Virus record (IMG/VR): IMGVR_UViG_3300035661_000001
Span: 186,001-250,000 of that record
Direction: 5' to 3' (one strand)
DNA: 64,000 nucleotides
The translations under genes and the position numbers were made by a program. Each line of letters begins with the position of its first letter. Position 1 is the first letter of the stretch. Below are positions 15,944 to 41,368 of this stretch, in pieces. The notes under the pieces were generated by a model. It was not told the DNA's origin. It saw only the letters and a program-made list of their open reading frames with translations, and searched no databases.

Positions 15944-15952
15944 AAATATTAT

Positions 15953-19252: not shown

Positions 19253-19254
19253 TC

Positions 19255-19410: not shown

Positions 19411-19454
19411 CCCATCCACTAGGCATACTGTGATATAGTGGATGTGCGAGATAC

Positions 19455-19528: not shown

Positions 19529-19629
19529 AAATATTCTTTCAGTACATATAAGTACTTGTAGCGGAACCTAAGAATATTTTATGCTGCTTTAAGGGGACTG
19601 ATATGATTCAGTCCCAAATTTATTATAAT

Positions 19630-19983
19630 GGGCTTGAAATAGATTCGACTCTGTATGATACGTTAGTGTGCAAGTGCCAAATGATTATCACTGGCTTAAA
19701 AATATAGTCAACGTATAGCTGCAAACGACAATGCAACTGCTCCTTACGCTCTAGCAGCTTGAGGATGTTCTTTAGATAAGGTATCTTTAGTAATCAAAAG
19801 AGCATTAACCCACCAAAGATAGCACCACATTGCTCAACGGATAATGGTTGCGAAATAAACAGAGATAGCTTATTGGGCGAATCCAATAAAATGTCGTTAA
19901 CTACATTAAAATTAACTAAACTTGTAAACGAATAGTAACCTTGATTATGGAACACCCCGGGGCGGTACCGGGCAGGTCCACAA
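19630..19983 (+). ncRNA. ssrA: tmRNA, one-piece; tag (A)ANDNATAPYALAA* at 19721-19762
   Basis: 5' GGGCTTG..GATTCGAC pairs with 3' CAGGTCC; T arm CCCGG-GGCGGTA-CCGGG; resume codon GCA; tag ends ALAA; full CCA not encoded. Confidence 0.92.
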
Positions 19984-19985
19984 AT

Positions 19986-20023
19986 AAAAAATCCCCGATG
20001 AAATTCGTCGGGGATTTTTTTTT
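19986..20023. terminator. Bidirectional intrinsic terminator between tmRNA and lysin
   Basis: A6-TCCCCGATGA-AAT-TCGTCGGGGA-T9. Confidence 0.9.
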
Positions 20024-20035
20024 ATATATTGTGTA

Positions 20036-20764: not shown

Positions 20765-20831
20765 AATTGCCTCCTGAGCCTATGCATTTAAAATGATAAG
20801 GTTATATATAATTGTTCATAAAGGAGATAAT

Positions 20832-21170
20832 ATGACGTAGGTTAAATCTGGTGATAAATTGTATGTTGTAACTCGTAATGATTTAAATCATGGGCAACAA
20901 GCTTCACAAATATGTCACGCTATGAGACAGTTCATTTCAGAAAATTCTGAAGTTGAGAATAACTGGTTTTGTAATTCTAATTATATTTGTTTATTATCTG
21001 TGCCTTCGGAAGAAGAATTAAAAACTTTAATATTCAAAGCTATTAACAAAAATATAAAATATTCATTATTTAAAGAACCTGATTTAAATGATTCTATCAC
21101 TGCCGTTTGTTTTGAACCCAGTAAAATAACTAAAAGACTATTGTCAAAATTACAATTAGCATTTCAGTAA
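20832..21170 (+). CDS. PTH2-family peptidyl-tRNA hydrolase-like protein with an in-frame TAG at codon 3
   Basis: AAGGAG SD, then ATG ACG TAG GTT AAA TCT GGT GAT AAA TTG in frame with YVVTRNDL..GQQASQICHA...FKEPDL...TA. Confidence 0.75.
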
Positions 21171-21195
21171 TATACTAATACATCTGTATGTTATT

Positions 21196-21924
21196 ATGCC
21201 TTATAAAAGAACTTATACAATTGATCAATTTTACCAAGCAATAAAAGAATCTTTTTTCATGACTGATGCTTTAAGAAAACTAGAGTTAACCGGTGGAAGT
21301 GCACAATCATTCAAACGATTGTTAAATGAATTAAACCCAGATACTTCTCACTGGATTAACCCTCATACGTTAAAAATAAATAATTTAAAAAACATAAAAG
21401 AAATTCCTCTAGAAGATATTTTAGTAAAAGACAGTTCATATGTTTATTCTTCTTTAAAAGAAAAATTAATAAAAAACAAATTGCTTGAATATAAATGCAA
21501 TATTTGTTCTATAAAATCATGGAATAATAAAAATATAGTTTTACAGCTTGATCACATAAACGGTATTCATAATGATAATAGGATAGAAAACCTTAGATTA
21601 TTGTGTCCAAATTGCCATTCACAAACAGATAGTTTTTGTGGTAAATTAAAAAAAGAAAATTTGCCCAAATGTAAATATTGTGTAAATTCTGTTAGAGATA
21701 AACGTGCAAAAACTTGTCAAGCATGTTATTTATCTGGTGATTTTACAAAAATCAGTTGGCCATCAGATAATGAATTAAATGAATTAATATTAAATAATAA
21801 AATTAAAGATGTTGCAAAAATGTTAAATGTTAATGAATCTTCATTAAGATGGCGCCTGAAAAAGAGAAATATAATGATAAGCAAAACGAAAGAAATGATT
21901 AAATCATTTTTGTCCATGTTCTGA
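21196..21924 (+). CDS. HNH endonuclease
   Basis: CNIC, LQLDHINGIHNDNRIENLRLLCPNCHSQT; C-terminal helix-turn-helix. Confidence 0.9.
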   Translation: MPYKRTYTIDQFYQAIKESFFMTDALRKLELTGGSAQSFKRLLNELNPDTSHWINPHTLKINNLKNIKEIPLEDILVKDSSYVYSSLKEKLIKNKLLEYKCNICSIKSWNNKNIVLQLDHINGIHNDNRIENLRLLCPNCHSQTDSFCGKLKKENLPKCKYCVNSVRDKRAKTCQACYLSGDFTKISWPSDNELNELILNNKIKDVAKMLNVNESSLRWRLKKRNIMISKTKEMIKSFLSMF

Positions 21925-22048
21925 ATTAGGATGCTGCGAAAATCCAGATACCTATACACCAGAACATGATCCATGTATAGATATTTGTGAAGAGTGTTTT
22001 GTAACTGAGTGTAAAAATTGTAAACAATCTTGTTGTTGTGATTTATGA
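21899..22048 (+). other. Start-less Cys-rich open frame (12 Cys in 49 codons)
   Basis: LNHFCPCSELGCC...CIDICEEC...CKNCKQSCCCDL*, +1 frame relative to the HNH tail. Confidence 0.4.
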
Positions 22049-22332
22049 ATTTCAGTTCATCTCCGTTAAAAATTAGATTGGCGACTTGGAAAGATTGGGA
22101 TAGCGCTGCTTATGAGTTAGGCGTATGTTTAGGTTTGTGGGGTGATGCCGGTGCGCCTCTTTGGGAAGATCCATGGCATGGATTAAAACATATTTTTTGG
22201 ACAGCTAATCCTTTAGGAGAAGCATTGCACAATATGTTACTAGAGCTAGTAACAGCTGGTGTTTTAGAAGCTCAAGAAGACAAACTATCATTTAGGTGGA
22301 ATCCTAATTATGATGCAAATGATGTAGAATAA
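22045..22332 (+). CDS. Hypothetical protein
   Basis: ORF track. Confidence 0.6.
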   Translation: MNFSSSPLKIRLATWKDWDSAAYELGVCLGLWGDAGAPLWEDPWHGLKHIFWTANPLGEALHNMLLELVTAGVLEAQEDKLSFRWNPNYDANDVE

Positions 22333-22361
22333 AAAATTAGTATTGGGGCTGAGTAAATAGT

Positions 22362-22580
22362 ATGTATATTTTCATAATTTATATAATTGTATTAGTAATA
22401 ATATTAGCTATTATATCTTATAATTTAGGTGTAAATGATAGGCTTAAAAGAGTACAACCAGAATATGATTTTTATTTTTTGATATCATTAGGCTGGCCAC
22501 TTGTACTAATTTTATTGATATTGGGCGTCCCATTTTATTTGATTTTTAAAATCGGGCAAAATTCATCTAAAAAGGATTAA
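22362..22580 (+). CDS. Small membrane protein
   Basis: Two hydrophobic helices. Confidence 0.55.
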   Translation: MYIFIIYIIVLVIILAIISYNLGVNDRLKRVQPEYDFYFLISLGWPLVLILLILGVPFYLIFKIGQNSSKKD

Positions 22581-22586
22581 TGTTTA

Positions 22587-22781
22587 ATGATTTTTAATAT
22601 TATTTTTGCTATCTATTTTTTGTTTTGTGTAACGGTAATACTAGGTGGGTATTTTATTTTAAGTATATATAAAGGATACTTACATAGTAAAAATAGGAAA
22701 TTAGACATATTGACTCAATCCGAAATTGAACAATTATTATTTATGGCTTTCCTTTTGTCATTATCTGTTTTTTTATTTTGA
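22587..22781 (+). CDS. Small membrane protein
   Basis: Two hydrophobic helices. Confidence 0.5.
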   Translation: MIFNIIFAIYFLFCVTVILGGYFILSIYKGYLHSKNRKLDILTQSEIEQLLFMAFLLSLSVFLF

Positions 22782-22850
22782 TGCTTGCGAAAATTCCTTT
22801 TTGGGTTGGTCAAATTGTCGGTAAAATCATAAAATGATATATGATATCTT

Positions 22851-23021
22851 ATGACAAGAGCAGAAATTCAAAACAAAATTAGAGTTATTAGAGATGAATT
22901 GGAAAATCGCCATAAATATGGCACGGTTAAAATAGCCGATTCAAAAGGTACCCCGATACCTGCAGAAAAATTACAAGCAGAGCTTTATTCACTTATTTAT
23001 AAAATGAGTAGGTATGAGTAA
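22851..23021 (+). CDS. Small hypothetical protein (56 aa, not in ORF track)
   Basis: MTRAEIQNKIRVIRDELENRH...KMSRYE; fills the gap and overlaps the next start. Confidence 0.6.
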   Translation: MTRAEIQNKIRVIRDELENRHKYGTVKIADSKGTPIPAEKLQAELYSLIYKMSRYE

Positions 23022-23478
23022 ATTAATCTTATCTATAGAACTTGTACCAAAATCTAGTTGGCTTAATAATGTAAGAGCCATTGTATCTCAGCAACAATGG
23101 GACATCATTCGAAGTAGAGTTTATTCAAAATTTTATAATATGTGCGAAATATGTGGTGGTGTTGGTCCTAAACATCCCGTAGAATGCCATGAAGTTTGGT
23201 CATATGATGATGAAACTAATATTCAAAAATTAGAAAGTATGACAGCGTTATGCCCTAATTGTCATATGGTTAAACATATAGGATTAGCACAAATTAACGG
23301 TAATTATCAAAAGGCTTTAAGCCATTTTATGTCAATAAATGGCTTGGGTAAAGACAAAGCGGTTAAATTAATCAATGATTCTTTCGTTTTATGGCAGAAG
23401 AGATCTAAGAAAAAATGGACGATAGACGTATCTTCTCTAAAAGAATTTGGTATTGATATAGAAAGTTTTAAAAAATGA
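23014..23478 (+). CDS. HNH-like nuclease domain protein
   Basis: CEICG, ECHE.W.Y, LCPNCHMVKH. Confidence 0.75.
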   Translation: MSKLILSIELVPKSSWLNNVRAIVSQQQWDIIRSRVYSKFYNMCEICGGVGPKHPVECHEVWSYDDETNIQKLESMTALCPNCHMVKHIGLAQINGNYQKALSHFMSINGLGKDKAVKLINDSFVLWQKRSKKKWTIDVSSLKEFGIDIESFKK

Positions 23479-23900
23479 AATGTCCGACTTGCTTATCTAT
23501 TATGAAATGTATTTCTGCTATAAATCCTGTTCCAGGTCAACCTGGAAAAGATCGCATGGACCTACATTGTTATAACAGAGAGGATCCAAAATCACCTAAT
23601 ATGTGTAGAGCAAGAGCACATATGGGTGTAATAACGGAAGATCCTAAAGAATGGGTATGTCATGAATATAATCTTTCATTTAAACATAATGAAAATTTAT
23701 TTTATTTAATTGGTTATGATAAATTAGTGGATCCTTATTTTCAGAGAAGACCTGTCGAGGAAAGCTATACTATTTTATCTGATGTTTTTGGAAGAGAAAT
23801 GGTAAAAGTAAATTTTGTTCCAATTTCGACTGGTGATGATATGCATGAACGGGCATATGATTTGTTTCATAGCCTACCGGATCAGGCACCAATTTCCTAA
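23475..23900 (+). CDS. Hypothetical protein; last 10 codons derive from a tRNA remnant
   Basis: CPTC N-terminus; stop TAA lies in the anticodon loop of the tRNA-Arg relic. Confidence 0.6.
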   Translation: MKCPTCLSIMKCISAINPVPGQPGKDRMDLHCYNREDPKSPNMCRARAHMGVITEDPKEWVCHEYNLSFKHNENLFYLIGYDKLVDPYFQRRPVEESYTILSDVFGREMVKVNFVPISTGDDMHERAYDLFHSLPDQAPIS

Positions 23901-23935
23901 ATTGTTTTAAATAGGTTCGATTCCTATTAGGGATA
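23870..23935 (+). pseudogene. tRNA-Arg(CCU) remnant lacking the 5' acceptor strand
   Basis: D arm GCCT/AGGC, anticodon arm CAAT-TTCCTAA-ATTG, T arm ATAGG-TTCGATT-CCTAT, 3' strand TAGGGAT with no matching 5' strand. Confidence 0.75.
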
Positions 23936-23957
23936 CTATAATGTTATATATGAACAT

Positions 23958-24677
23958 ATGAAGACGGCTCTATGTTTATCAGGTCATATAAGAAGCTATA
24001 AATCAGCTTATAAAATAATGTTTGACAAGATTATTCAACCATTAAATTGCGATATTTTTATTCATACTTGGGACACAGAGGGATTCGATGTCGTTCGTGG
24101 AGATCAACATTTAATGGATACCAATGTTGACGAGAATGAATTAAAAGATTTTTATCAAGCAAAAGATGTTGCGGTAGAAAAGATGAAAATATTTGATACT
24201 GATAAATATCAAGGTCGATTAGGTCCCGGCACGAGAAATAAAAATACTGTTATTTCAATGTTTGATGGAATCAAACAATCAAATGATTTAAAATCTTCGT
24301 ATGAAATTTCGAATAACATAAAATATGACATAACTATTAGGGCTAGACCAGATTTATTAATTAATCATTTTGATTGTCAATTTTTAAATGATAATAAAAA
24401 TGGAATTTACTTTCCAAAAGCTGGTAACTATCATGGATTAAATGATCAGTTCGCTTTCGGTAAATCAGAGTATATTGATTTTTATTCTGATTTTTATTCA
24501 AATTTAGATCATTTTTTTAATTTAGGATGTCCTTGGCATCCTGAGTCAATTGTAAAATTTGGAATGGTCCAAAATAAAATACCTATTTTAAGAAGCAATA
24601 TAAAATATGGTATTTTAAGAGCAAATGGCGATATATTTTATAATGCTCAAGAGAGACGTTTTGGCGATGAATTTTGA
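23958..24677 (+). CDS. Putative glycosyltransferase-like protein
   Basis: ALCLSGHIRS, DIFIHTW, YDITIRARPD, NDQFAFG, HPE. Confidence 0.6.
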   Translation: MKTALCLSGHIRSYKSAYKIMFDKIIQPLNCDIFIHTWDTEGFDVVRGDQHLMDTNVDENELKDFYQAKDVAVEKMKIFDTDKYQGRLGPGTRNKNTVISMFDGIKQSNDLKSSYEISNNIKYDITIRARPDLLINHFDCQFLNDNKNGIYFPKAGNYHGLNDQFAFGKSEYIDFYSDFYSNLDHFFNLGCPWHPESIVKFGMVQNKIPILRSNIKYGILRANGDIFYNAQERRFGDEF

Positions 24678-25848
24678 TAAATCAGTAGACTTAACTATCA
24701 TTAGCAACATACTAATGGCTGATGGTATTGGCAGACAAGGATTAGGATTAATCGAAGCTGTAAATGATAAATTATCATTGAATGTTTTACAGTTACCTCC
24801 TAAATCTTATAAAGACATTTCGCCGGAAGTATTGAAAGTTCTTATAAAACCTTTCAATAATTTTGGCAAAATTGCTTTTTGGACTTCGATTCTAGGAACA
24901 AATGCTGCTTCAATAAAACAGCACTCAGCAATTACATCTCCATTAAAAATTGCATACTCTATGTTTGAATCAGATGCAATACCAAAAATATGGGTAGATA
25001 CATTAAATTCAATTTATGACATGGTCATTGTGCCTGATAATTACTTGGTATCAATTTATGTTAATTCTGGAGTAAAAATACCAATTTTTGTCATACCTCT
25101 AGGTATTTATGTACAAGACTTATTAAATTTACCTTTTAAATCTGCCGCAGGAAATCCATTTACATTTGGTATGTCCGCTGGATTTTGGAAACGTAAAAAT
25201 CATATTAAATTATTAGAGGCATTTTCAAAAAGATTTGGAAATGATGAAAAATTCAAATTAAAATTACATGGCAGATTTGGTCCTTTTAAATCAGAAGTAG
25301 AAAAAGCAGTAAAAGAATTAGGGTTAAAAAATGTAGAATTATTCTCTACTCCTTTTTCTGTAAAAGATTACAATCAATTTATGAATGAAATTGATTGTTA
25401 CGTTTTCCCTTCCATGGGTGAAGGGTTCTCTGTAACTCCTAGAGAGTCTTTAGCTTTAGGTAAACCTTGTATAGTAACAAATAACACGGCGCATAAAACT
25501 ATTTGTGATAGTGGATATGTTGTTCCTTTACTTGCAAATAAAAAAATACCAGCGGTATATGAAGTATTTGGAAACCAAATTATTGGTAATTTTTATGACT
25601 GCGACGTAAATGATTTATCAAAATCAATGATGAATGTTTATGATAATTTTGATGAATTTTCAAAAAAAGCCCAACTCGGAAGAGAATGGGTTAAACAATA
25701 TTTATGGTCTGAGTTAGCACCGACATATTTGAATATTTTCAAACCAAAATTAATTGAATTAAAAAAATCAAATGTAGTTAATAAGAATGGATTTCAAACT
25801 AACAACGAGAATCTCTTTCGTAAAATGCAGGAGTTATTAAATGATTAA
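24667..25848 (+). CDS. Glycosyltransferase family 4 (GT-B)
   Basis: YSMFES, RKNH, FPSMGEGFS..PRE (EX7E). Confidence 0.85.
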   Translation: MNFDKSVDLTIISNILMADGIGRQGLGLIEAVNDKLSLNVLQLPPKSYKDISPEVLKVLIKPFNNFGKIAFWTSILGTNAASIKQHSAITSPLKIAYSMFESDAIPKIWVDTLNSIYDMVIVPDNYLVSIYVNSGVKIPIFVIPLGIYVQDLLNLPFKSAAGNPFTFGMSAGFWKRKNHIKLLEAFSKRFGNDEKFKLKLHGRFGPFKSEVEKAVKELGLKNVELFSTPFSVKDYNQFMNEIDCYVFPSMGEGFSVTPRESLALGKPCIVTNNTAHKTICDSGYVVPLLANKKIPAVYEVFGNQIIGNFYDCDVNDLSKSMMNVYDNFDEFSKKAQLGREWVKQYLWSELAPTYLNIFKPKLIELKKSNVVNKNGFQTNNENLFRKMQELLND

Positions 25849-30421: not shown

Positions 30422-30775
30422 ATGAAAAGCATACCTACTAGCATTAGTAAAAAAATATTGTGGAGGTATGTTAATAAGAAATTAAATTATAGCATACATC
30501 ATTATCACGTATTTAGTGTAATATCAATTTTGTTTGAAGAATTGGTAAAAGATTGGAGTGCGGGGAAAGAGATCATGATAAATAATTTTGGTACATTTGT
30601 TTTGCAACAAATGCCAAATAGACATTATCATGATTTTAGAGACGGCACTATTAAACTTGGCACAGGTCACAAACTTCTTCACATGTTTTTGTCTGATAAA
30701 TTAAAAAAGAAATTGACAAAACATTTGGATATTGAAGATACCTGGAAAGGTCAAAATGAGAGTAAAGAAGCCTAA
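30422..30775 (+). CDS. HU/IHF-like DNA-binding protein
   Basis: GKEIMINNFGTF...R..HDFRDG...F..S..LK. Confidence 0.7.
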   Translation: MKSIPTSISKKILWRYVNKKLNYSIHHYHVFSVISILFEELVKDWSAGKEIMINNFGTFVLQQMPNRHYHDFRDGTIKLGTGHKLLHMFLSDKLKKKLTKHLDIEDTWKGQNESKEA

Positions 30776-31136
30776 AGTTTTTATTTGTGTAGGTTTAGTT
30801 GATAGTAAAATTGTTGCAGATGCCATATTAATTTCATCGGCGGATGAGGCTAAAGAACAATTTGCAAGAAAATATGGTAACATTCCTAATAAAATTTTGG
30901 GACCATATTTGAATCCTAAAAAGATAGAGCATGAAAAAGTTTTGAGATTTATATCCCATAAATCTCAAAAAGCAATTTATAATGATTGGTTAGTAAATGC
31001 GTTTTTGTTGCATGATCCGGAAGATCATGCATATTTGATTTTTGTTAAAAAGACTGATGATGTTTCCGCCATACCGCCAAAAGGCACTATAATTGTTCCC
31101 ATTCAAGATTTGAGGTTTATTGAAAATGAAAAATGA
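30756..31136 (+). CDS. Hypothetical protein
   Basis: ORF track; ATG 30756 preferred. Confidence 0.55.
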   Translation: MRVKKPKVFICVGLVDSKIVADAILISSADEAKEQFARKYGNIPNKILGPYLNPKKIEHEKVLRFISHKSQKAIYNDWLVNAFLLHDPEDHAYLIFVKKTDDVSAIPPKGTIIVPIQDLRFIENEK

Positions 31137-31476
31137 GCTGCTTGCCCAAATAAAAGAAAAACTGCTTACGATGAAATCAGAGCTTTTAATAAAAGCAAAT
31201 AAATTACCAGATATAGACACTGACGGAGACGAAACCGACGAGGTGCAAGGTAATTTATTAATAGAAATTGCCAATCAATTAAGCTCTCGCGATATATCGA
31301 AAATATCATTAGTTAACAATGCTTTACGTAAAATAGAAGATTCATCTTATGGTTTATGTGAAGATTGTGAAGAAGAGATTCTAGAAAAAAGATTATTAGC
31401 AAATCCGTGTTTTAAGACTTGCGTTCTATGTGCCGAAGCTAGAGAAGCTGAAGAAAAACAAAGAAAGAGGTTCTGA
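31120..31476 (+). CDS. dksA: DksA/TraR C4 zinc-finger protein
   Basis: Coiled-coil tip DETDEV; YGLCEDC..I...RL.A.P...CVLC. Confidence 0.88.
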   Translation: MKMKNELLAQIKEKLLTMKSELLIKANKLPDIDTDGDETDEVQGNLLIEIANQLSSRDISKISLVNNALRKIEDSSYGLCEDCEEEILEKRLLANPCFKTCVLCAEAREAEEKQRKRF

Positions 31477-31478
31477 TT

Positions 31479-32063
31479 TTGAATACAATTGTAACAGAGA
31501 CAACCGATCATGGAGAGTTTCCAGTAGATATCTACCAAAAATTATCAAATGATAGAATTCTATTCATCTGTGATGTTATTGATGATAAATTAGCTACTGA
31601 TATCGTGGCTACCTTATTACTTAAAGATTCTGAAAATCCTGAAGAAAAAATTACTTTATTTATAAATTCAGAAGGTGGAGACATTCGTAATGTCTTAATG
31701 ATTTATGACATGATGTGTTTGGTACAAGCACCAATTGAAACAGTATGTATTGGATCTGCTATGGATGAAGCTGCAATTATTCTAGCTGCCGGCACACCTG
31801 GTATGAGATTTGCTACTAAAAATTCAGTAATATCAATTAATCAATTAACCCATGATTGGGTAAATGTTTCAGACTTAACGGATGCTAAAAAAGTTCTGGA
31901 TCAATTCTTAAGTGATAATAAGAAAATGATGGAGATTTTGGCAAAATCTTGTAGTAAAACATATAAACAGGTAATAGAAGATTTTAATCGTAGAGTTTTC
32001 ATGAATTGTAATCAAGCTGTTAAATATGGCTTAATTGATAAGGCGGTATCGGTTAAAAAATGA
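31479..32063 (+). CDS. ClpP-family protein, catalytically inactive (ClpR-like)
   Basis: ClpP fold motifs (LSNDRILF, INSEGG); catalytic Ser position reads GSAMDEA and His position reads ISINQL. Confidence 0.85.
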   Translation: MNTIVTETTDHGEFPVDIYQKLSNDRILFICDVIDDKLATDIVATLLLKDSENPEEKITLFINSEGGDIRNVLMIYDMMCLVQAPIETVCIGSAMDEAAIILAAGTPGMRFATKNSVISINQLTHDWVNVSDLTDAKKVLDQFLSDNKKMMEILAKSCSKTYKQVIEDFNRRVFMNCNQAVKYGLIDKAVSVKK

Positions 32064-32653
32064 ATCATCTAATAGGAAAACTTCATCAGCATGACACGCC
32101 ACAATCTAGTATGTTTCCGGGATATATGGAAACTTATATTAGGTTATCAAAAAATAGAATAATTTTTCTAAACGAAAATATAACTAAACAGTCAGCATCT
32201 GAATTGTCAGCTTTATTATTGTATTACGATAATTTATCTCAAGAAGATATCTCTATTTATTTACACTGTGACGGCGGAGATGCTGACGGATTAGCTAATA
32301 TTTATGATATAATGCAAATGGTAAGATCTCCAATAAAAACTATTTGTATTGGTAAATGTTACTCTGCCGCAGCAGTCATATTGGCAGCAGGAACTCCAGG
32401 AGAAAGATACGCATTTAAGCATTCAAAAGTTATGATACATGGTATTCAGGCTGGATTCCCCATCCCCGGACATGATATGACGAATAGCAAAAGTTATTAT
32501 GAGTTTCTCAAAGAGAACAATGATAGTGTTATGAGAATATTAGCACATCATACGGGTCATCCTTTAGATGAAATAAAACAAGCGTGTACCCGTGATGTTT
32601 GGTTGTCAGCACAGGAAGCAAAAAATTACAATATTGTAGACCACGTTTTATGA
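32060..32653 (+). CDS. clpP: ATP-dependent Clp protease proteolytic subunit (triad intact)
   Basis: GKCYSAA (Ser), VMIHG (His), TRDVWLSAQEA (Asp). Confidence 0.9.
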   Translation: MNHLIGKLHQHDTPQSSMFPGYMETYIRLSKNRIIFLNENITKQSASELSALLLYYDNLSQEDISIYLHCDGGDADGLANIYDIMQMVRSPIKTICIGKCYSAAAVILAAGTPGERYAFKHSKVMIHGIQAGFPIPGHDMTNSKSYYEFLKENNDSVMRILAHHTGHPLDEIKQACTRDVWLSAQEAKNYNIVDHVL

Positions 32654-33386
32654 AAAATTTATCCTTGGTATCTTTTATTGGAATTGATCATCATACTGAT
32701 TTTAATGATTTATTAGAATTCAAAAACCCAAAAAATAATATGGATTATGAATTTGGTGTATTGTATAGTGATTCTAAAAATGATCGCGATATTAGATACC
32801 CAGGCTATGATTTTTGTTTAAAATTTTTATCATGGGCTAAAATTAATGATATTTCTAGGTCTATTCATATTTGTGGATCTTCCATAGATAGTTATTTAAA
32901 AGAAGATCCACAAATATTGAAATTATGTAATGAATTGGGTGATTACAATCATCGAATTCAATTAAATATAGATAAATATCATAATAATGAAGAGTTAGCC
33001 GATAACATTATTAATGTTACTACAAAATACGGTCATAATTTAATTTTACAGAAAAATGAATTGAAAGAAAAATTCAATAAAGTATTTGTAGAACGCACTG
33101 AGATTTTGCATCCCATTTTAGAGAAGTTTTATTTTCATGGCTTTATGATGCGTCATGTGGTCTTGGAAAAGAAATGATAAAAGCTCCCATGCCAGATATG
33201 TTTTTTCCGGGTTATGCCGGTGGTATTAATCCAGAAAATGTAATGAAAATTATCAATTTAATTGAAAAAGAAAATATATGGGGGTATCCATATTATATAG
33301 ATATGGAATCCGGTATAAGAACAGACAATATCTTTTCGGTTAAAAAATGTAGAGATATTAAGAAATTAATAGATAATGCATCTTAA
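32650..33386 (+). pseudogene. PRAI-like TIM-barrel protein split by a 1-nt frameshift near 33102-33142
   Basis: Alternative frame gives WLYDASCGLG in frame with GYAGGINPEN and IDMESGIR. Confidence 0.65.
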
Positions 33387-33418: not shown

Positions 33419-34951
33419 ATGATTAAAGTTGTCGCGAAATCACCACCTGAGCCAGCTCAGGTAAAATTGAGAGAGTCAAAAAAGGTTTGGAATAAACAAG
33501 TTTCCGAATTTGCCGATAATCTTTTTCGTTTAAAAGACATGATGAATGGAAAGCCTTCCAAATTTCATGCTGAAAAATCTTCCATTAAAGATCCTATTCC
33601 AGGTGATCCGGTGACAATCATTGGTGTTTTAGCTAATGATTTTCAAGAAATTTCTCAAAAAGGCAATTCAATTGTACAGCAACAATTAGAATATTCTAAA
33701 AATAGAAGAAAAAAACAACCGAAACAAACTCTAGCTCCTTTGCCACCACAGGCTCAGTCACCTACTGATTTGACAAATCAACTAGCAAATCATTTTGATG
33801 ATAAGTTAATAGTTTTAGGTTCAAATCCACTTACTAGATGGTTTACAAGATTTTTAACTCCTACCATGGGAAGTAGTCCAAAAGCAAGAGTTAGGAAATA
33901 TAGAATGTCATTGTTAAAAGCGGCAGTTGATATCTATGATGATATTGTAGAATTACAGTCTACAATTGTAAAATCTAGTCCTGAAAGTATTTTTCTTTCC
34001 ACACGCTTATTAAATAAAATAATTCATAATTGGGATTTTTTTAAAACTGGTATTACTACTTTTGATTCAAATGCTGATGTTCCGGAAAAAGAAACAAAAA
34101 ATAGTAAAGACCCTATTTCCTCAGAAGAAGTAGGAAGAACTGGTCCTTCCGAAAATAAAGATAAAAAATCTCCTGAAGTGGTTAAACCAACAATAAAAAA
34201 AACTATTGCTCCTAGTGAAATAGCAAAAGAATATTTGAGTCATACTAACGATGATAACTCTCCTATTGTAATAATAAATGATTACATGAAATATTCTGCT
34301 AATTTTACTGATGTCAATTTAAAAACATTAACCGGATTAATTACAGAATATCGTTTGGCTCCACAGAACGAAAACACAGTTCTTAATTTACATCCAGAAC
34401 TAGCTGTGAAAATTAATAGAGAATATAAAAGAATATTAGCTGAGCTTAACGGTAAATATGGCACTTCTGGATCATCATTTAAAGAGATACTTGAAGCGAA
34501 ACTTAAAAAAGATGGTAGTGCTAATTATGAATTAGAAGTTCACAGTCAAAAATTAGTGCAAAAATGGTTGGGAAGATTAAAACATGAATTCTTACCTGTT
34601 GATAAAACTTCTGCACATAGATTAGACATATATAAAATTGCTGATTCTTTGCGAAAAACTGTAGATAAAATGATGGATTCATTGGAGAAAACAATGGATA
34701 CAGCCGTACTTACATCACTTCACGACGCAGGTACTGAAGAACTTAAAACTATAAAAGTTTTAGTAGATGGTTTAGAAAAAACGCTTGTAGGCAAAGGATT
34801 TAATCGTCCATTCATGGATATGTTAGATTCGGGATCAATAACCAATTTTGGTCCTCAACTTGATGATCAACAAAAAAAACGTCTACAAACTATGATTGAT
34901 AGAAGACGTGTTAAAGAATTGGCTGACCTTTATCAAGGTAAACAGTTATGA
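33419..34951 (+). CDS. Large hypothetical protein (possible virion/internal protein)
   Basis: 510 aa; charged helical segments with low-complexity linkers. Confidence 0.6.
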   Translation: MIKVVAKSPPEPAQVKLRESKKVWNKQVSEFADNLFRLKDMMNGKPSKFHAEKSSIKDPIPGDPVTIIGVLANDFQEISQKGNSIVQQQLEYSKNRRKKQPKQTLAPLPPQAQSPTDLTNQLANHFDDKLIVLGSNPLTRWFTRFLTPTMGSSPKARVRKYRMSLLKAAVDIYDDIVELQSTIVKSSPESIFLSTRLLNKIIHNWDFFKTGITTFDSNADVPEKETKNSKDPISSEEVGRTGPSENKDKKSPEVVKPTIKKTIAPSEIAKEYLSHTNDDNSPIVIINDYMKYSANFTDVNLKTLTGLITEYRLAPQNENTVLNLHPELAVKINREYKRILAELNGKYGTSGSSFKEILEAKLKKDGSANYELEVHSQKLVQKWLGRLKHEFLPVDKTSAHRLDIYKIADSLRKTVDKMMDSLEKTMDTAVLTSLHDAGTEELKTIKVLVDGLEKTLVGKGFNRPFMDMLDSGSITNFGPQLDDQQKKRLQTMIDRRRVKELADLYQGKQL

Positions 34952-35328
34952 AAGAAGGCTATATTTATATAGGATCTAATGTGTTTCCTACTTATTTTGC
35001 TGTTTCTAGCCAAGAGCAGCAACAAGGTCTTATGGATGTAAAATGGCCACCACCGGTAATGTCTTTTATATATGATACACCACAGCCAAATAAATTTTGG
35101 ATGAAAAATACTCCCAGTCCTTTAGATATTGTTTTTTGTAGAAAAGGCGAGATAATTTCAATTCATAAAGGCGAACCATTTTCTACTTCTGTTATTGGTC
35201 CTAATGAATTTTCAGACTTAGTAATTGAATTCCCGCATGGAACAATAGCCTCGCTTGGCGTTAAACTTAATAATAAGGTTGGGATCATATCTCCTTCTTT
35301 ACAAGATTTATACAAATTTAAAAAATAA
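34948..35328 (+). CDS. DUF192-family protein
   Basis: QQGLM, FWMKNTPSPLDIVF, VIEFP.G. Confidence 0.85.
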   Translation: MKEGYIYIGSNVFPTYFAVSSQEQQQGLMDVKWPPPVMSFIYDTPQPNKFWMKNTPSPLDIVFCRKGEIISIHKGEPFSTSVIGPNEFSDLVIEFPHGTIASLGVKLNNKVGIISPSLQDLYKFKK

Positions 35329-35366
35329 CGGCGCTCCCATCGCTTTGCACAAGTAAGAATATTTAT

Positions 35367-36371
35367 ATGAGCGACCTAGATATCAATAATTTTAACAAAA
35401 TATTGCGCACTTTTGATATAAGCGCAAACTGTGTAAACTATAAAGCTATAGATAATTATTTTTTCTATGATTTGGAATTGCGACCACAAGCCAAAGTTAA
35501 AGATATACAAAGATTTGCCGATGAGATTTCTCTTTCACTGAAATCTTGTAGTAAACCAAATATAAGAATTCTCCATCAAGAAGGAATAGTTAGATTAGAA
35601 TTTGCAACGAGCCGCCAGAAGCGGCTCGATTTGTTTGATTACTTTATCAATGATAATATTCCTAAAGGTGAATTACCTTGTTTGTTGGGTCAGGCATTAA
35701 ATGGCGAACGAGTTTGGATGGATTTATCTCAAAATCCTCATATGATTATCTCTGGTACAACTGGTTCTGGTAAAAGCACGTTGCTACACACTATAATAGC
35801 TAATCTGTTCAATTATAATAAAGTAAAGTTATTTCTGATAGATCCTAAAAATGTGGAATTTTTAGAATATGATAAAAAGATTAATAATGATGTACAGGTA
35901 TCATATTCATATCATGATTCTTTAGTTTTGCTGGATCAGCTAATAGATACTATGGAAACTAGATATTCTTTATTGAGAGAGTCAAATATAAAGAGCCTTC
36001 CTTATATAGTTTTGATAATTGATGAATTTGGAGACTTGATTTTACAGGATTCTAATAAAGAATTTTATACTAAACTATGTAAATTAGCTCAAAAATGTCG
36101 AGCTGCAAAAATGAATATAATCATTTCTACACAAAGACCTTCAGTGAACATTATCAATGGCGCTATTAAAGCAAATTTTCCAGCTAGAATTTCTTGTAAA
36201 GTAGCGAGTCATATTGATTCTAAAATCATCTTGGATGCTACTGGTGCGGAAAACCTTATGGGTCATGGCGATGCTTTGTTAAAAGATAACTCTAGGTCCA
36301 TGGAGAGGTTCCAGATAGCATATACGAATCCAGAACAAGTTTGTTCATATTTTGGTGATGTTAATGAGTAA
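35367..36371 (+). CDS. FtsK/SpoIIIE-like ATPase (motor domains only)
   Basis: PHMIISGTTGSGKS, LIDPK, IIDEF.DL, STQRPS, ILD..GAE.L.G.GD. Confidence 0.9.
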   Translation: MSDLDINNFNKILRTFDISANCVNYKAIDNYFFYDLELRPQAKVKDIQRFADEISLSLKSCSKPNIRILHQEGIVRLEFATSRQKRLDLFDYFINDNIPKGELPCLLGQALNGERVWMDLSQNPHMIISGTTGSGKSTLLHTIIANLFNYNKVKLFLIDPKNVEFLEYDKKINNDVQVSYSYHDSLVLLDQLIDTMETRYSLLRESNIKSLPYIVLIIDEFGDLILQDSNKEFYTKLCKLAQKCRAAKMNIIISTQRPSVNIINGAIKANFPARISCKVASHIDSKIILDATGAENLMGHGDALLKDNSRSMERFQIAYTNPEQVCSYFGDVNE

Positions 36372-38252: not shown

Positions 38253-40031
38253 ATGAAAACATTAATAATAGTTGAATCGGGAACAAAAGCAAAAAGTATC
38301 CAAGATATTCTTGGATCAGACTATATAGTAAAAGCTAGCGTGGGTCACATAACAGAATTAGCCAGTGGTGGTTTTCATGGTATGGGAGTAGATGTTGATA
38401 AAGATTTTAAGCCTCATTATGTTTTATCTGATGATAAAGTATCAGTACTAGAAAATTTAATGAATTCTTCTAAAGAATGTGACTCTATTATTATAGCAAG
38501 CGATCCGGATAGAGAAGGCGAAGCTATTGCTTGGCATCTTTCTAAAAGATTAGAAGATATGGGTAAACCGATCAAGAGGATGACCTATGGTAAAATAACT
38601 AAGCCTGCACTTTTAAAATCTTTGAATGAACTTAGAGATGTTGATTTGAATATTTTTCATGCTCAAGAAGCCCGTCGTATTCTGGATCGTTTAGTTGGAT
38701 TTAGTGCTTCCCCATTTTTGATGAATTTTTTCGGACCTAAATTGTCGGCTGGTCGTGTTCAATCAGTTGTAACACGAATGATTATTGATCGTGAGTTAGA
38801 AATAGAAGCGTTTATACCAGAAGAGTTTTATACTATTCAAGTTAATCTCGATAAAAACGGACAAGATCCTTTTACTACAAAATATTCTGGAAGATTAACT
38901 AATGTTAAAACTGCGAAATCTATATATGACAGATTATCAGCAAACGATAAGTATATAGTTACAGATGTGCGGGCTGAGGAAGAAAAAAAAGCAGCGCCTG
39001 CACCATTAATTACTGCTACATTATTACAGGCAATGAGTTCTCTTTATAATCTTGATCCTGAAGAAACCATGAAAGCAGCTCAGTCATTATTTGAAAGTAA
39101 ATACATTTCGTATCATAGAACAGATTCGGTAAGAATCGAAAATGAAACGGCAAAAATGGCTCATGATTGGCTGGATGAAAATAAGATTGATAGACCTAGC
39201 AAACCTAATATTTTTAAAAATGAAAATGAATCACAAGATGCACATGAATGCATTCATCCTTGTGATGTCAATTTTATAGTCGATGATAATAATTACGAAA
39301 TTATAAATAAAAATGAGAGACTAGTTTATAAGACTATATGGCAGTATTTTGTTGCTAGCCAGATGTTGCCAGTAGTATATAATACATTAAAAGTGACCGC
39401 TCATGTGTTGGGTGACAAATCAGCAGAAGTGAAAGCTTCAGGAAAAGCCTTAAAAACTAAAGGTTTTCTTGATATTTTAGGAATCGAAGATAAGAACAAA
39501 ATTGAAATACCTAATTTAGAAGTTGGAGATTTACTTTCTTTATCTGGAAAAATACCAGTTTGTATGGAAAAAAAGCAAACTCAGCCTCCGCCACGCTATT
39601 CAATTAATAAAGTGATGAGTGAGCTTAAGAAAAGAGGTATTGGTAGACCGGCAACATATGCAGATTTATTAAGTAAAATTTCTGCAAGAAATTATGTGGA
39701 AAAGAAAGGTAATGTTTTTCATGCCACAGATTTGGGTAAAAAAATAACTCGTGTTTTATCAGATTATTTTTCATTCATGAATTATGATTATACTGCCAAA
39801 ATGGAGAAATCTTTGGATGAAATTGAGAATGGAAAAGTAAATCATATTGATATGTTAAAAAAGTTTTATCCAGAATTCAAATCTGAATTAGATCGGGCAT
39901 ATCTAAATCATGGAGGCACACTTTGTGATAAGTGTAGTAGTCCAATGACACTAAGAACAACTAAAAATTCAGGAGAAAAATTTTTAGCTTGTAGCGCGTA
40001 TCCGAAATGTAAAAATATTAAATCCATATGA
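38253..40031 (+). CDS. topA: DNA topoisomerase I (type IA)
   Basis: IVES, SVGH, DPDREGE, SAGRVQS, catalytic SYHRTDS, GIGRPATY, C-terminal zinc ribbon. Confidence 0.95.
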   Translation: MKTLIIVESGTKAKSIQDILGSDYIVKASVGHITELASGGFHGMGVDVDKDFKPHYVLSDDKVSVLENLMNSSKECDSIIIASDPDREGEAIAWHLSKRLEDMGKPIKRMTYGKITKPALLKSLNELRDVDLNIFHAQEARRILDRLVGFSASPFLMNFFGPKLSAGRVQSVVTRMIIDRELEIEAFIPEEFYTIQVNLDKNGQDPFTTKYSGRLTNVKTAKSIYDRLSANDKYIVTDVRAEEEKKAAPAPLITATLLQAMSSLYNLDPEETMKAAQSLFESKYISYHRTDSVRIENETAKMAHDWLDENKIDRPSKPNIFKNENESQDAHECIHPCDVNFIVDDNNYEIINKNERLVYKTIWQYFVASQMLPVVYNTLKVTAHVLGDKSAEVKASGKALKTKGFLDILGIEDKNKIEIPNLEVGDLLSLSGKIPVCMEKKQTQPPPRYSINKVMSELKKRGIGRPATYADLLSKISARNYVEKKGNVFHATDLGKKITRVLSDYFSFMNYDYTAKMEKSLDEIENGKVNHIDMLKKFYPEFKSELDRAYLNHGGTLCDKCSSPMTLRTTKNSGEKFLACSAYPKCKNIKSI

Positions 40032-40051: not shown

Positions 40052-41368
40052 ATGAAAATTAAAGAATATAAAGAATTTTTAACGCCAACGTTATTAGAAG
40101 CGCAAGAAACCCTTTCAAAAGAAATTTTGGATTCGTTAACAGAAATATCTGTTCAAGCATTAGGTATTGAGGACCCTAGACCAACTGCCAATTTTATTGA
40201 TTTAATGAAATGGACCGAAGCAAATTTCAAAAAATTCTTAAAAGATCAAGATCATATAAATAGATATGTTCACAATAGAATTATTATTGATGGACAGTTT
40301 TTGAAATTTTGTAATGAAAATTCTGTTACTGTAAAATGTTTGTATAAAGATTCTATTATCTCTTGGAAAACAGACCATGATTTTGAGAAATTTTTTGTAC
40401 AAGGAGTATTTCTTGTCAAAACTAAAAACGTAGAATTTCTTCAGGCAGCCCTTTTTCATAAGGGAAATCAAAATGAAGATGAAGTTAGTTTTTTTACAGT
40501 TGTATCTAATAGTAATTATGAAGAATATCTTAAATTAAGAAATTCATTTGATGAATGGATACAAAAAAGAGATAGAAGTAATTTACATATTAGAGTTGTA
40601 GACGGAGAAGATATTCCGTATACTAAAGATCATACATGGGGCGATCTGTTTTTACCTACAGAAATTAAAACGGAATTACAGGCACTAGTTGAGAATTTCT
40701 TAGCTTCAAAAGAATTCTATAATTCTAATAGAATACCTTGGAAAAGAGGAGTATTATTATACGGTCATCCTGGTAACGGCAAGACATCTATTATTAAAAC
40801 TGTTATGTCGATGTATAATTTTAAACCAGTGACTGTCGTACCCGGAGCACCGGATGAAGCCATTAGAGAAGCTTTTACATACGCTGAAGAACAAAGTCCT
40901 TCCTTACTGTATTTTGAAGATTTAGATTCCATTCTAGAAAAGAATGATGCTTCTTCATTCTTGAATTTAATGGACGGCATTTCTGCGAAGAATGGACTGT
41001 TAGTCATTGCTACGGCTAATGATGTGCGCAAACTAAAATCTAACATTACAGACAGACCATCAAGATTTGATAGAAAATTTGAAATTCCCCAACCAAATCC
41101 AGATATGGCTCATATATACATTAAGAGGTGGTTTGGAAACATGATTACCGCGAGAAAATGTAGAGAGCTTGCAAAAATATCCGTTAAGTCGGGATTTTCG
41201 TATGTTCATTTGAAGGACTTATATATTTCTGCAATGTTTGCTGCTTTATCACAAAACCGTAAAGTTCCAACAGAGAGAGATATAGATAGTGCATTGAATC
41301 GTTTAATCAAGGAAAAAACCCCGTTAACTGGTTCGAAGATTGTAGACACTGACAGATATTTCAAGTAA
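40052..41368 (+). CDS. Classic-clade AAA ATPase
   Basis: RGVLLYGHPGNGKT, FEDLD, second region of homology RPSRFDR. Confidence 0.88.
   Translation: MKIKEYKEFLTPTLLEAQETLSKEILDSLTEISVQALGIEDPRPTANFIDLMKWTEANFKKFLKDQDHINRYVHNRIIIDGQFLKFCNENSVTVKCLYKDSIISWKTDHDFEKFFVQGVFLVKTKNVEFLQAALFHKGNQNEDEVSFFTVVSNSNYEEYLKLRNSFDEWIQKRDRSNLHIRVVDGEDIPYTKDHTWGDLFLPTEIKTELQALVENFLASKEFYNSNRIPWKRGVLLYGHPGNGKTSIIKTVMSMYNFKPVTVVPGAPDEAIREAFTYAEEQSPSLLYFEDLDSILEKNDASSFLNLMDGISAKNGLLVIATANDVRKLKSNITDRPSRFDRKFEIPQPNPDMAHIYIKRWFGNMITARKCRELAKISVKSGFSYVHLKDLYISAMFAALSQNRKVPTERDIDSALNRLIKEKTPLTGSKIVDTDRYFK

What the first reader, a model, noticed from the sequence alone, without database searches (positions are those of the whole stretch)
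31120..32653. Tandem dead ClpR-like and active ClpP pair directly behind DksA
Seen: the first ClpP paralog has Asp at the catalytic Ser position (GSAMDEA vs canonical GxAASxA) and Asn at the His position (ISINQL vs MIHQP). The second keeps Ser, His and Asp. The two overlap by 4 nt and follow dksA. Established: ClpP/ClpR heteromeric cores occur in cyanobacteria, plastids and apicoplasts. Inference: this may be a phage hetero-tetradecamer, or a dead subunit that poisons or re-specifies host Clp complexes to control degradation of tmRNA-tagged or regulatory proteins.
Basis: partly seen in the sequence, partly recalled or inferred. Interest (0 to 1): 0.65.

Follow-up and report, generated by a model that had tools for sequence, protein, structure and literature searches.

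The report
Dead-plus-active ClpP pair in huge phages
A 452-kb phage carries two adjacent Clp protease genes, one with all three catalytic residues lost and one intact, and this pair always follows a DksA-like gene across a large clade of huge phages; it looks like a phage-made counterpart of the ClpP/ClpR mixed proteases of cyanobacteria and plastids, arisen independently.

Summary
Window 31120-32653 holds a DksA-like gene, a 194-aa ClpP homolog with no catalytic triad (Ser->D96, His->N121, Asp->R172), and a 197-aa ClpP homolog with S102/H127/D179 intact. The two ClpP genes overlap by ATGA.

The window lies in a 451,956-bp viral record. The order dksA -> dead clpP -> active clpP recurs in 36 of 36 related viral loci (dead paralog 99% down to 41% identity) and around the most divergent dead-family members.

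No dead-family member has the triad. The substituting residues vary, but the protein is under strong purifying selection (pN 0.05-0.18, pS 0.6-0.8). The active paralog always keeps Ser and His plus Asp or Glu.

Retention is complementary. The dead paralog keeps the N-terminal axial-loop signature and the ring-ring Asp/Arg sensor, and the active paralog has lost both.

The dead family is one clade, absent from 185,579 prokaryote species genomes and from GenBank phages. It is separate from a cyanobacterial triad-less paralog (AU p=0.00015). The phage encodes no ClpX, ClpA, ClpC or ClpS.

Best reading: an obligate ClpP/ClpR-like heteromeric core that uses host unfoldases. Assembly is inferred, not shown; the complex prediction gave no verdict.

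The parts
31120..31476 (+). DksA/TraR-like zinc-finger protein (118 aa; the true start is possibly the ATG at 31126). First gene of the conserved three-gene module.
   Evidence: PF01258 31.2 bits against 24.9; phrog_54 DksA-like; below the NCBIfam DksA equivalog cut-offs (49 against 105). The acidic tip motif DxDGDETDEIQ, CxxC...CxxC and a KQRKRF tail are conserved in 30 orthologs. It sits directly upstream of the dead ClpP in 36 of 36 loci.
31465..31470 (+). Shine-Dalgarno AAGAGG, 8 nt upstream of the TTG start of the dead ClpP, inside the 3' end of dksA.
   Evidence: Read directly from the sequence. The invariant M-N-T N-terminus in homologs supports this start.
31479..32063 (+). Catalytically dead ClpP paralog (194 aa): D96, N121 and R172 at the Ser, His and Asp positions, E97 after the ex-nucleophile. 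The canonical N-terminal axial loop and the Asp/Arg ring-ring sensor are retained.
   Evidence: PF00574 156.8 bits; alignments; family conservation; pN much lower than pS; AlphaFold2 pLDDT 85.6 with an N-terminal hairpin; Foldseek TM 0.92-0.93 to Mtb ClpP2 in ClpP1P2.
32060..32653 (+). Active-type ClpP paralog (197 aa): S102, H127 and D179 intact. The N-terminus is non-canonical, variable and predicted disordered, and the sensor acid is lost.
   Evidence: PF00574 154.4 bits; alignment; triad invariant in 121 of 121 homologs, and S/H 30 of 30 with D22/E8 across loci; AlphaFold2 pLDDT 81, residues 1-16 below 50 and no hairpin.
32060..32063 (+). ATGA stop/start overlap between the dead and active ClpP genes; implies translational coupling (inference).
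   Evidence: Read directly. In relatives the junction is an overlap or a gap of at most about 12 nt.
30422..30775 (+). HU-like DNA-binding protein; conserved upstream neighbour of the module (context).
   Evidence: PF00216 27.4 bits; same position in L008 and L009.
34948..36371 (+). DUF192 protein (34948-35328) and FtsK/SpoIIIE-like ATPase (35367-36371); conserved downstream neighbours (context).
   Evidence: synteny in L004-L009 and L094/L095.

Best explanation
The two genes encode the subunits of one phage-made heteromeric Clp peptidase core. It is functionally analogous to ClpP/ClpR (cyanobacteria, plastids, apicoplasts) and to asymmetric ClpP1P2 cores.

ORF2 supplies the only active sites. 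ORF1 is a non-catalytic structural subunit that has kept the parts ORF2 has lost: the N-terminal axial gate/docking loop and the ring-ring Asp/Arg sensor.

The phage encodes no Clp-type unfoldase or ClpS, so the core most likely works with host AAA+ unfoldases (ClpX, ClpA or ClpC). This would give the phage its own degradation chamber during infection.

The genes are co-transcribed and probably translationally coupled with a DksA-like RNA-polymerase-channel factor, as part of a non-structural, host-takeover and proteostasis gene block.

Shown: the sequences, the triad states, the conservation, the linkage, the single origin of the dead clade, and the absence of a phage ClpX/ClpA/ClpS. Inferred: co-assembly, which subunit docks the unfoldase, use of host unfoldases, and the role of DksA.
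For: 1. Triad fully lost in ORF1 and intact in ORF2.
2. Loss is shared by every dead-family member examined: 120 close homologs, 30 viral loci and about 45 cluster representatives at 50% identity. The active family keeps the triad in 121 of 121.
3. Purifying selection on the dead gene is at least as strong as on the active one: pN 0.05-0.18 against pS 0.6-0.8. Dead-paralog identity of 82-85% exceeds 68-75% for the active paralog in close relatives. Mean pairwise identity is 56% against 54%.
4. Obligate linkage: dksA-dead-active occurs in 36 of 36 viral loci and around the deepest-branching members P0266, P0264 and P0282. There is an ATGA overlap and an SD in the window.
5. Complementary retention. 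Axial-loop residues E8/T10/G13/E14/D18 are kept in 27-30 of 30 dead sequences against 0-7 of 30 active. The sensor acid is kept in 24 of 30 against 2 of 30, and R170 in 27 of 30 against 14 of 30. The triad is 0 of 30 against 30 of 30.
6. The dead model is a full ClpP fold with an N-terminal hairpin, and its best matches are the unfoldase-docking Mtb ClpP2. The active model has a disordered N-terminus.
7. No ClpX (TIGR00382), ClpX zinc finger or ClpS in the genome. Its only AAA_2 hit is a generic AAA+, and a YjoB/Cdc48-class AAA also lies in the window.
8. The precedent for dead/active Clp cores is established (PMC7966870).
Against: - No direct evidence of co-assembly; the one complex prediction gave no verdict.
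- Hydrophobic-pocket positions (listed from memory) are not clearly better kept in either paralog, so which face docks an unfoldase is open.
- The host and its Clp repertoire are unknown.
- No RNA data.
- The genome lacks a recognisable S77 or S78 prohead protease, so a virion-maturation role is not excluded.
Confidence: 0.6

Rival explanations
1. Decoy or poison: the dead subunit co-assembles with, or caps, host ClpP or host unfoldases to shut down host Clp proteolysis, for example to protect phage proteins or to stop degradation of labile antitoxins in abortive-infection systems. The active paralog has a separate job.
For: The dead subunit keeps the canonical axial loop and the ring-ring sensor that would let it stack on a canonical ClpP ring or dock an unfoldase. 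The phage has no unfoldase of its own. Host ClpP is used by anti-phage systems such as CmdTAC (abstract listed).
Against: A pure poison does not need an active partner, yet the active gene is adjacent in 36 of 36 loci and in the deepest branches, with overlapping or abutting reading frames. The active paralog has lost exactly the features the dead one keeps, which fits mutual dependence.
Confidence: 0.15
2. Capsid or virion protease: the pair is this phage clade's head-maturation (prohead) protease of the ClpP-like S14 type, with the dead copy as a scaffold-like partner.
For: PHROG matches are labelled head maturation protease. No S77 or S78 prohead protease was found in the genome. [quoted passage not shown]
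Against: - Scores to the ClpP-related head-maturation model are far below its cut-off (48 and 54 bits against 120) and well below those to the cellular ClpP subfamily models (166 and 151 bits).
- Both proteins cover the full ClpP profile, including the handle. They have no scaffold or capsid-targeting extension.
- The neighbours are DksA, HU, FtsK-like, topoisomerase, AAA and trigger factor, not portal, scaffold or capsid genes.
- The only terminase-like hit is weak and about 55 kb away.
- The S77 control search rang in no genome, so that absence is uninformative.
Confidence: 0.1
3. The dead paralog has a new, non-Clp function (for example a chaperone-like or ligand-binding heptamer, or a partner of the DksA-like protein) that only uses the ClpP fold. 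Its adjacency to the active ClpP reflects ancestry, not assembly.
For: A Glu at the position after the ex-nucleophile is kept in 29 of 30 loci and 23 of 35 representatives. Tight linkage to dksA is as strict as linkage to the active ClpP.
Against: The ex-triad positions themselves are highly variable, so no new catalytic or binding centre is evident there. The features that are retained are those of ClpP assembly and gating.
Confidence: 0.1

Closest known systems
ClpP3/ClpR of cyanobacteria, the ClpPR core of plastids, and ClpP/ClpR of apicoplasts
   Same: A ClpP homolog lacking the catalytic triad is encoded together with an active ClpP, and is maintained by selection as a structural subunit of a heteromeric core (definition and architectures from PMC7966870).
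   Different: - Independent origin. The phage dead family is its own clade (SH-aLRT 99; 100/98), and forcing it together with a cyanobacterial triad-less paralog is rejected (p-AU 0.00015).
- It is encoded by huge phages, not by cells or organelles.
- It is always preceded by a DksA-like gene.
- No cognate ClpC, ClpX or ClpS is encoded alongside.
- Assembly is not shown.
Asymmetric ClpP1P2 hetero-tetradecamers (M. tuberculosis, Listeria, Chlamydia, P. aeruginosa, Streptomyces)
   Same: Two tandem clpP paralogs with divided roles. The best structural matches of the dead subunit are Mtb ClpP2 chains in ClpP1P2, TM 0.92-0.93. In Mtb only the ClpP2 ring docks ClpX/ClpC1 (from my own knowledge).
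   Different: In those systems both paralogs keep the triad. Here one has lost all three residues.
Single ClpP genes of jumbo phages, and the ClpP+ClpX pair of phage G
   Same: Phage-encoded cellular-type ClpP, proposed to act on host or phage proteins (Iyer et al. 2021, PMC7824862; phage G, PMC12484599).
   Different: Those reports describe a single ClpP; neither passage mentions a dead paralog. Phage G brings its own ClpX. Here there is a dead/active pair and no ClpX. GenBank phages contain nothing closer than about 40% identity to the dead paralog.
ClpP-like (S14) phage head-maturation proteases
   Same: Same superfamily, and PHROG labels match.
   Different: Scores are far below the NCBIfam head-maturation model cut-off. 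Both proteins have the full-length cellular ClpP architecture and a non-structural gene neighbourhood.

Membership tests
ClpP family (Pfam PF00574, MEROPS S14 fold) | Sequence match above the family's gathering score over the whole domain | tested here: met
   ORF1 156.8 bits (profile positions 4-179 of 182) and ORF2 154.4 bits (8-179 of 182), against a cut-off of 20.2.
ClpP family (Pfam PF00574, MEROPS S14 fold) | Ser-His-Asp catalytic triad | tested here: not met
   ORF1 has D96, N121 and R172, so it is a pseudo-protease. ORF2 meets this feature with S102, H127 and D179.
ClpP family (Pfam PF00574, MEROPS S14 fold) | ClpP fold: N-terminal hairpin, head domain and handle helix | tested here: met
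   ORF1 model has pLDDT 85.6, strands 4-9 and 12-17 and helix 130-157, with TM 0.92-0.93 to solved ClpPs over 194 columns. ORF2 model has pLDDT 81 and the same core, but a disordered N-terminus.
ClpP family (Pfam PF00574, MEROPS S14 fold) | NCBIfam ClpP equivalog (TIGR00493) score above its cut-off | tested here: not met
   136.8 bits (ORF1) and 122.4 bits (ORF2) against 308.6. The best subfamily model NF001368 gives 166.5 and 151.2 against 249. Both are divergent members.
ClpP family (Pfam PF00574, MEROPS S14 fold) | Stacked double-heptamer assembly that works with an AAA+ unfoldase | not testable with these tools
   The size limit of the complex tool excludes 7+7 models. The pairwise job gave no verdict.
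ClpR (non-catalytic ClpP paralog of cyanobacteria, plastids and apicoplasts) | ClpP homolog that lacks the catalytic triad | tested here: met
   Definition from PMC7966870.
ClpR (non-catalytic ClpP paralog of cyanobacteria, plastids and apicoplasts) | Co-assembles with an active ClpP in one core | tested here: inconclusive
   Genetic linkage holds in 36 of 36 loci and features are complementary, but the complex prediction gave no verdict.
ClpR (non-catalytic ClpP paralog of cyanobacteria, plastids and apicoplasts) | Descent from the cyanobacterial ClpR lineage | tested here: not met
   The phage dead clade is separate from cellular ClpPs (100/98). The AU test rejects a clade of the phage dead family plus the cyanobacterial triad-less paralog L135 (p 0.00015). 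Caveat: L135 is triad-less (A/Q/N) and cyanobacterial, but could not be confirmed as canonical ClpR because NCBIfam has no ClpR-specific model.
ClpP1P2-type hetero-tetradecamer | Two tandem clpP paralogs | tested here: met
ClpP1P2-type hetero-tetradecamer | Both paralogs carry the triad | tested here: not met
   ORF1 lacks all three residues.
ClpP-like phage head-maturation protease (NF045542) | Score above the model cut-off of 120 bits | tested here: not met
   48.0 bits (ORF1) and 54.4 bits (ORF2).
ClpP-like phage head-maturation protease (NF045542) | Position within the portal/scaffold/capsid module | tested here: not met
   The neighbours are HU, DksA, DUF192, FtsK-like, topoisomerase IA, AAA and trigger factor. 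The only terminase-like hit is weak (15 bits) and about 55 kb away. No capsid was found with PF05065, so the structural module itself was not located.
DksA/TraR family | zf-dskA_traR domain above the gathering score, with a C4 zinc finger | tested here: met
   31.2 bits against 24.9. CxxC...CxxC is conserved in 30 orthologs.
DksA/TraR family | DksA equivalog score, and the canonical DxxDxA coiled-coil tip | tested here: inconclusive
   NF033459 49.2 bits against 105 and TIGR02420 45.6 against 115.5. The tip motif is DETDE[IV], which is DxxDx[IV] and not DxxDxA (the canonical motif is from my own knowledge).

The most novel reading that the evidence does not exclude
Huge phages have independently evolved a ClpR-like pseudo-protease whose ring acts as the docking and gating adaptor. 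It captures host AAA+ unfoldases and couples them to a phage-specific catalytic ring. The strictly co-inherited DksA-like protein is a functional part of the same module, as an adaptor, a regulated substrate, or a link between transcription takeover and targeted proteolysis. On this reading the module is a portable, three-part host-proteostasis hijacking device.
Probability: 0.25. Interest if true: 0.75.

Novelty: new variant of a known kind. Interest (0 to 1): 0.58.

Why it matters
Non-catalytic ClpP paralogs (ClpR) have so far been described in the cyanobacterial, plastid and apicoplast lineage. Here a second, independent origin of the same solution appears in viruses. It is maintained over deep divergence: about 45 clusters at 50% identity, on contigs of up to 480 kb, from mats, sediments, freshwater and soil.

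The two phage subunits have divided between them the features that one bacterial ClpP carries alone: the active site on one, the axial gate and ring-ring sensor on the other. That makes a compact natural experiment on why Clp cores tolerate, or need, dead subunits.

It also suggests that huge phages control host proteolysis with their own peptidase core while borrowing host unfoldases. This is directly testable by co-expression.

The invariant coupling to a DksA-like factor is unexplained. It could reveal a link between RNA-polymerase control and proteolysis during takeover.

Tried and rejected
- Complex prediction of ORF1 with ORF2, using genome-matched alignments A2 and A3 (two attempts failed as busy; job run). 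No verdict: score 0.28 against a mark of 0.32, and controls were not run. This is neither evidence for nor against binding.
- hmmalign with --trim shifted the E. coli numbering and gave meaningless triad calls. Redone with MAFFT --add.
- The promoter scan shows no excess over shuffles (61 against 55.2 ± 6.5) and so is uninformative. Terminator-like sites are enriched, but most lie inside genes.
- DNA-level search of GenBank phages: no match.
- Cluster look-up for names of NCBI-sourced homologs: no names or accessions returned.
- The AAA_2 hit at window 224-1330 was tested as a possible phage unfoldase and is only a generic AAA+ (27 bits against a ClpA cut-off of 993). The AAA at 40052-41368 is YjoB/Cdc48-class, not Clp-type. 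Neither was pursued as a ClpP partner.
- Prohead-protease searches: S77 and S78 were negative, and the S77 control rang nowhere, so that absence is uninformative. The capsid model PF05065 was negative.
- Whether D at the Ser position co-varies with R at the Asp position (a possible salt bridge). They co-occur in 16 of 18 D-bearing loci, but these form one subclade, and the wider family shows D with K, I or T. Not distinguishable from shared ancestry, so not claimed.
- Whether dead and active paralogs are sisters. A tree with named cellular ClpPs puts them on one side of the cellular group. A wider tree with metagenomic representatives does not, and its deep nodes are weak. Left unresolved.
- Alternative genetic code for the sparse, high-GC genome ends. 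The ORF-coverage statistics are ambiguous. No code other than 11 was used for any translation.
Full report
**1. What is there**

Under the standard bacterial code, window 31120-32653 contains three co-directional, tightly packed genes:
- a DksA-like gene, 31120-31476 (118 aa)
- ClpP-like ORF1, 31479-32063 (194 aa, TTG start)
- ClpP-like ORF2, 32060-32653 (197 aa)

Both ClpP-like proteins match Pfam CLP_protease over essentially the whole profile, at 156.8 and 154.4 bits against a cut-off of 20.2. The first gene matches zf-dskA_traR at 31.2 bits against 24.9.

The junctions were read directly. dksA ends with TGA at 31474-31476. An AAGAGG Shine-Dalgarno at 31465-31470 lies 8 nt before the TTG of ORF1. 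ORF1 and ORF2 share an ATGA overlap at 32060-32063. The dksA start may be the ATG at 31126 and not the TTG at 31120.

**2. Triad states**

I used alignments to solved ClpPs and to E. coli ClpP taken from the annotated K-12 record.
- ORF1 has D96 at the nucleophile Ser (GSAMDEA) and N121 at the His (ISINQL). All three residues are gone.
- ORF2 has S102, H127 and D179.

**3. Genomic setting**

The window is bases 186001-250000 of a 451,956-bp viral record classed as having direct terminal repeats. The genome has 41 tRNA genes, no tmRNA, and one CUA-anticodon suppressor tRNA. Runs that hold the stretch are microbial-mat and sediment metagenomes, and no RNA run holds it.

The genes around the pair are non-structural:

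| Window position | Gene |
|---|---|
| 30422-30775 | HU-like protein |
| 34948-35328 | DUF192 |
| 35367-36371 | FtsK-like ATPase |
| 38253-40031 | Topoisomerase IA |
| 40052-41368 | YjoB/Cdc48-class AAA ATPase |
| 56177-57427 | Trigger factor, above the NCBIfam equivalog cut-off |

The genome has no ClpX (TIGR00382), no ClpX zinc finger and no ClpS. Its only AAA_2 hit is a generic AAA+ at window 224-1330.

**4. Conservation of the dead state**

- Among the 120 closest homologs of ORF1 (69-100% identity; many on contigs of 440-467 kb), the Ser position is D117/N2/G1/A1, the His position S87/N26/G8 and the Asp position R104/K13/T3/V1 (counts include ORF1). None has a catalytic residue at any of the three positions.
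- The 120 closest homologs of ORF2 all keep S, H and D.
- A profile scan of IMG/VR returned 36 loci in which the dead paralog ranges from 99% down to 41% identity, on contigs of 43-480 kb.
- In 30 non-redundant sequences (the window plus 29 of these loci), the dead paralog never has S, H or D at the three positions. The substituting residues vary: D/N/K/A/G/E/H, S/G/T/N/D and R/K/T/L/Q/V/I. The active paralog always has S and H, plus D (22) or E (8).
- An exhaustive profile search of 1.84 billion cluster representatives put about 45 triad-less representatives at the top (308 down to about 175 bits). Nearly all start with an MNT...E-like N-terminus. Canonical S/H/D ClpPs follow.

What is conserved is the loss, not a particular replacement. 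The S->D change is typical only of the window's subclade.

**5. Selection**

The dead gene is not decaying.
- It is intact in every locus.
- Pairwise pN is 0.05-0.18 while pS is 0.6-0.8 (saturated). Where dN/dS can be estimated it is roughly 0.04-0.11, similar to or lower than for the active gene.
- In close relatives the dead protein is the best conserved of all neighbours (82-85% against 68-75% for the active one and 36-76% for the others).
- Over 435 pairs, mean identity is 56% (dead), 54% (active) and 51% (DksA-like).

**6. Linkage**

The order dksA -> dead clpP -> active clpP, with overlapping or abutting frames, holds in 36 of 36 viral loci. It also holds in 441-kb and 467-kb contigs and around the deepest-branching dead-family members P0266, P0264 and P0282. 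P0264 has one small ORF inserted between dksA and the dead gene.

The DksA-like protein is itself conserved. It has an acidic DxDGDETDEIQ tip motif, CxxC...CxxC and a KQRKRF tail.

**7. Complementary features**

In E. coli mature numbering, counted over 30 sequences of each paralog:

| Feature | Dead paralog | Active paralog |
|---|---|---|
| Axial-loop residues E8 / T10 / G13 / E14 / D18 | 28 / 28 / 28 / 27 / 30 | 1 / 0 / 0 / 2 / 7 |
| Acid of the ring-ring Asp/Arg sensor | 24 | 2 |
| R170 of the sensor | 27 | 14 |
| Triad residues | 0 | 30 |
| K25 | 1 | 25 |

The residue after the ex-nucleophile is Glu in 29 of 30 dead sequences and Ala in 30 of 30 active ones.

The AlphaFold2 model of the dead subunit (pLDDT 85.6) shows an N-terminal beta-hairpin and the handle helix. 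Its best Foldseek matches, at TM 0.92-0.93 over the full length, are M. tuberculosis ClpP2 chains in ClpP1P2. The model of the active subunit (pLDDT 81) has residues 1-16 below pLDDT 50 and no hairpin.

The functional meaning of these positions (gate and unfoldase coupling; the inter-ring sensor) comes from established ClpP structural work recalled from memory. It was not tested here. Positions of the IGF/LGF pocket, also listed from memory, do not clearly favour either paralog.

**8. Phylogeny and distribution**

The dead family is a single clade (SH-aLRT 99, 47 rows), and the active family is another (99).

With named cellular ClpPs, the three groups (cellular, dead, active) each have 100/98-99 support. 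A cyanobacterial triad-less paralog (L135, A/Q/N) groups with a cyanobacterial S/H/D ClpP. Forcing it together with the phage dead clade is rejected (p-AU 0.00015). L135 could not be verified as canonical ClpR.

Whether the dead and active paralogs arose by duplication within the phage lineage is unresolved.

No dead-family member was found in one genome for each of 185,579 prokaryote species; the best match is 41% identity, to ordinary ClpPs. None was found in 50,697 GenBank phage records, where every match is below 40%.

**9. Interpretation**

The combined evidence best fits an obligate heteromeric peptidase core: a single ancient loss, strong purifying selection, invariable adjacency with probable translational coupling, and reciprocal loss of features between the two paralogs. 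In that core ORF2 supplies the catalysis, and ORF1 supplies assembly, gating and possibly unfoldase docking. The core would use host unfoldases.

This works like ClpP/ClpR and like asymmetric ClpP1P2, but it belongs to neither by descent or by definition (for the definitions).

The rivals are a host-Clp decoy, a prohead protease, and a new function on the ClpP fold. They are weighed in their own sections. None is excluded, and the first two make clear experimental predictions.

Physical assembly was not shown.

**10. Literature**

ClpP as a single gene is known in jumbo phages (PMC7824862). Phage G carries ClpP and ClpX, both detected in particles (PMC12484599). Jumbo-phage surveys list CLP_protease or clpP among common genes.

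Six searches of the held library found no description of a dead/active ClpP pair in phages or of its linkage to DksA. The library does not cover subscription-only papers, so prior description cannot be fully excluded.

**11. Verdict**

This is a real, non-chance feature: a new, virus-borne and independently evolved variant of the ClpP/ClpR theme, embedded in a conserved three-gene module with a DksA-like factor. Interest is moderate to high for Clp and phage-takeover biology. The mechanism is plausible but not demonstrated.

Noticed in passing
window 56177-57427 (+): Phage-encoded trigger factor. It passes the NCBIfam tig equivalog cut-off (187.6 bits against 180.2) and has Trigger_N, FKBP and Trigger_C domains. 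In E. coli, tig lies directly upstream of clpP-clpX. Together with the ClpP pair and thioredoxin, it suggests a phage proteostasis toolkit.
   Followed up: partly
window 40052-41368 (+); also at the end of L009: A 438-aa single-ring classic AAA ATPase. Its best solved relative is B. subtilis YjoB (E 1e-31), followed by VAT, Cdc48 and PAN. It follows topoisomerase IA here and in a 441-kb relative. It is not a Clp-type unfoldase, and whether it could feed the phage ClpP core was not tested.
   Followed up: partly
genome G000:C1 1-80000 and 400001-451956, against the 80001-400000 core: Strong compositional mosaic. The ends are 42-56% GC with sparse long ORFs, and the core is 30-34% GC. The 56% GC stretch 420001-440000 has only 5 ORFs of at least 250 aa, no Rfam hits and no tandem repeats. 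Possible causes are chimeric assembly, a foreign segment or recoded genes.
   Followed up: partly
genome G000:C1 80119-80195; ORF statistics for the whole genome: A CUA-anticodon suppressor tRNA, which ARAGORN labels tRNA-Pyl. Reading TAG as sense raises long-ORF coverage only in the high-GC ends (by 5 to 15 points against 0 to 3 in the core). Removing TGA or TAA raises it at least as much there, so stop-codon recoding is neither shown nor excluded.
   Followed up: partly
genome G000:C1 42-243 and 451744-451945: The terminal repeat seems to be only about 250 bp and consists of two tRNA-Arg(TCT) genes at each end. Exact first-k = last-k comparisons (k from 100 to 2000) all fail because the repeat is offset. 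This casts some doubt on the 'complete with DTR' call.
   Followed up: no
window 3318-4241 (+): LAGLIDADG homing endonuclease (94 bits), directly after a polynucleotide kinase-phosphatase (2343-3287) and a thioredoxin (1332-1646).
   Followed up: no
window 12695-25848 (+): Sugar and modification genes: a methyltransferase (12695-14089), a DegT/DnrJ aminotransferase (16768-17907, 232 bits) and a GT1 glycosyltransferase (24625-25848). These may act on DNA, the virion or the host surface.
   Followed up: no
L120-L148 (Streptomyces genomes), L145 (Leptospiraceae MAG), L135 (Gloeocapsopsis): Cellular ClpP paralogs with partial or full triad loss turned up in the genome scan. About 20 Streptomyces species have a ClpP with Gly aligned at the His position (S/G/D), almost always just downstream of an S/H/D ClpP gene. 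A Leptospiraceae ClpP reads N/H/V and a cyanobacterial one A/Q/N. These calls rest on one added-sequence alignment and were not checked further.
   Followed up: no
L009 1823-2350: A 441-kb relative encodes a translation initiation factor IF3 homolog (IF3_N and IF3_C) a few kb upstream of the same module.
   Followed up: no
window 32599-33177 (+): The ORF downstream of the active ClpP, as listed from its first TTG, overlaps the ClpP gene by 55 nt. In relatives the homologous gene starts just after the ClpP stop, so its true start here is probably further downstream. It has no family match.
   Followed up: no
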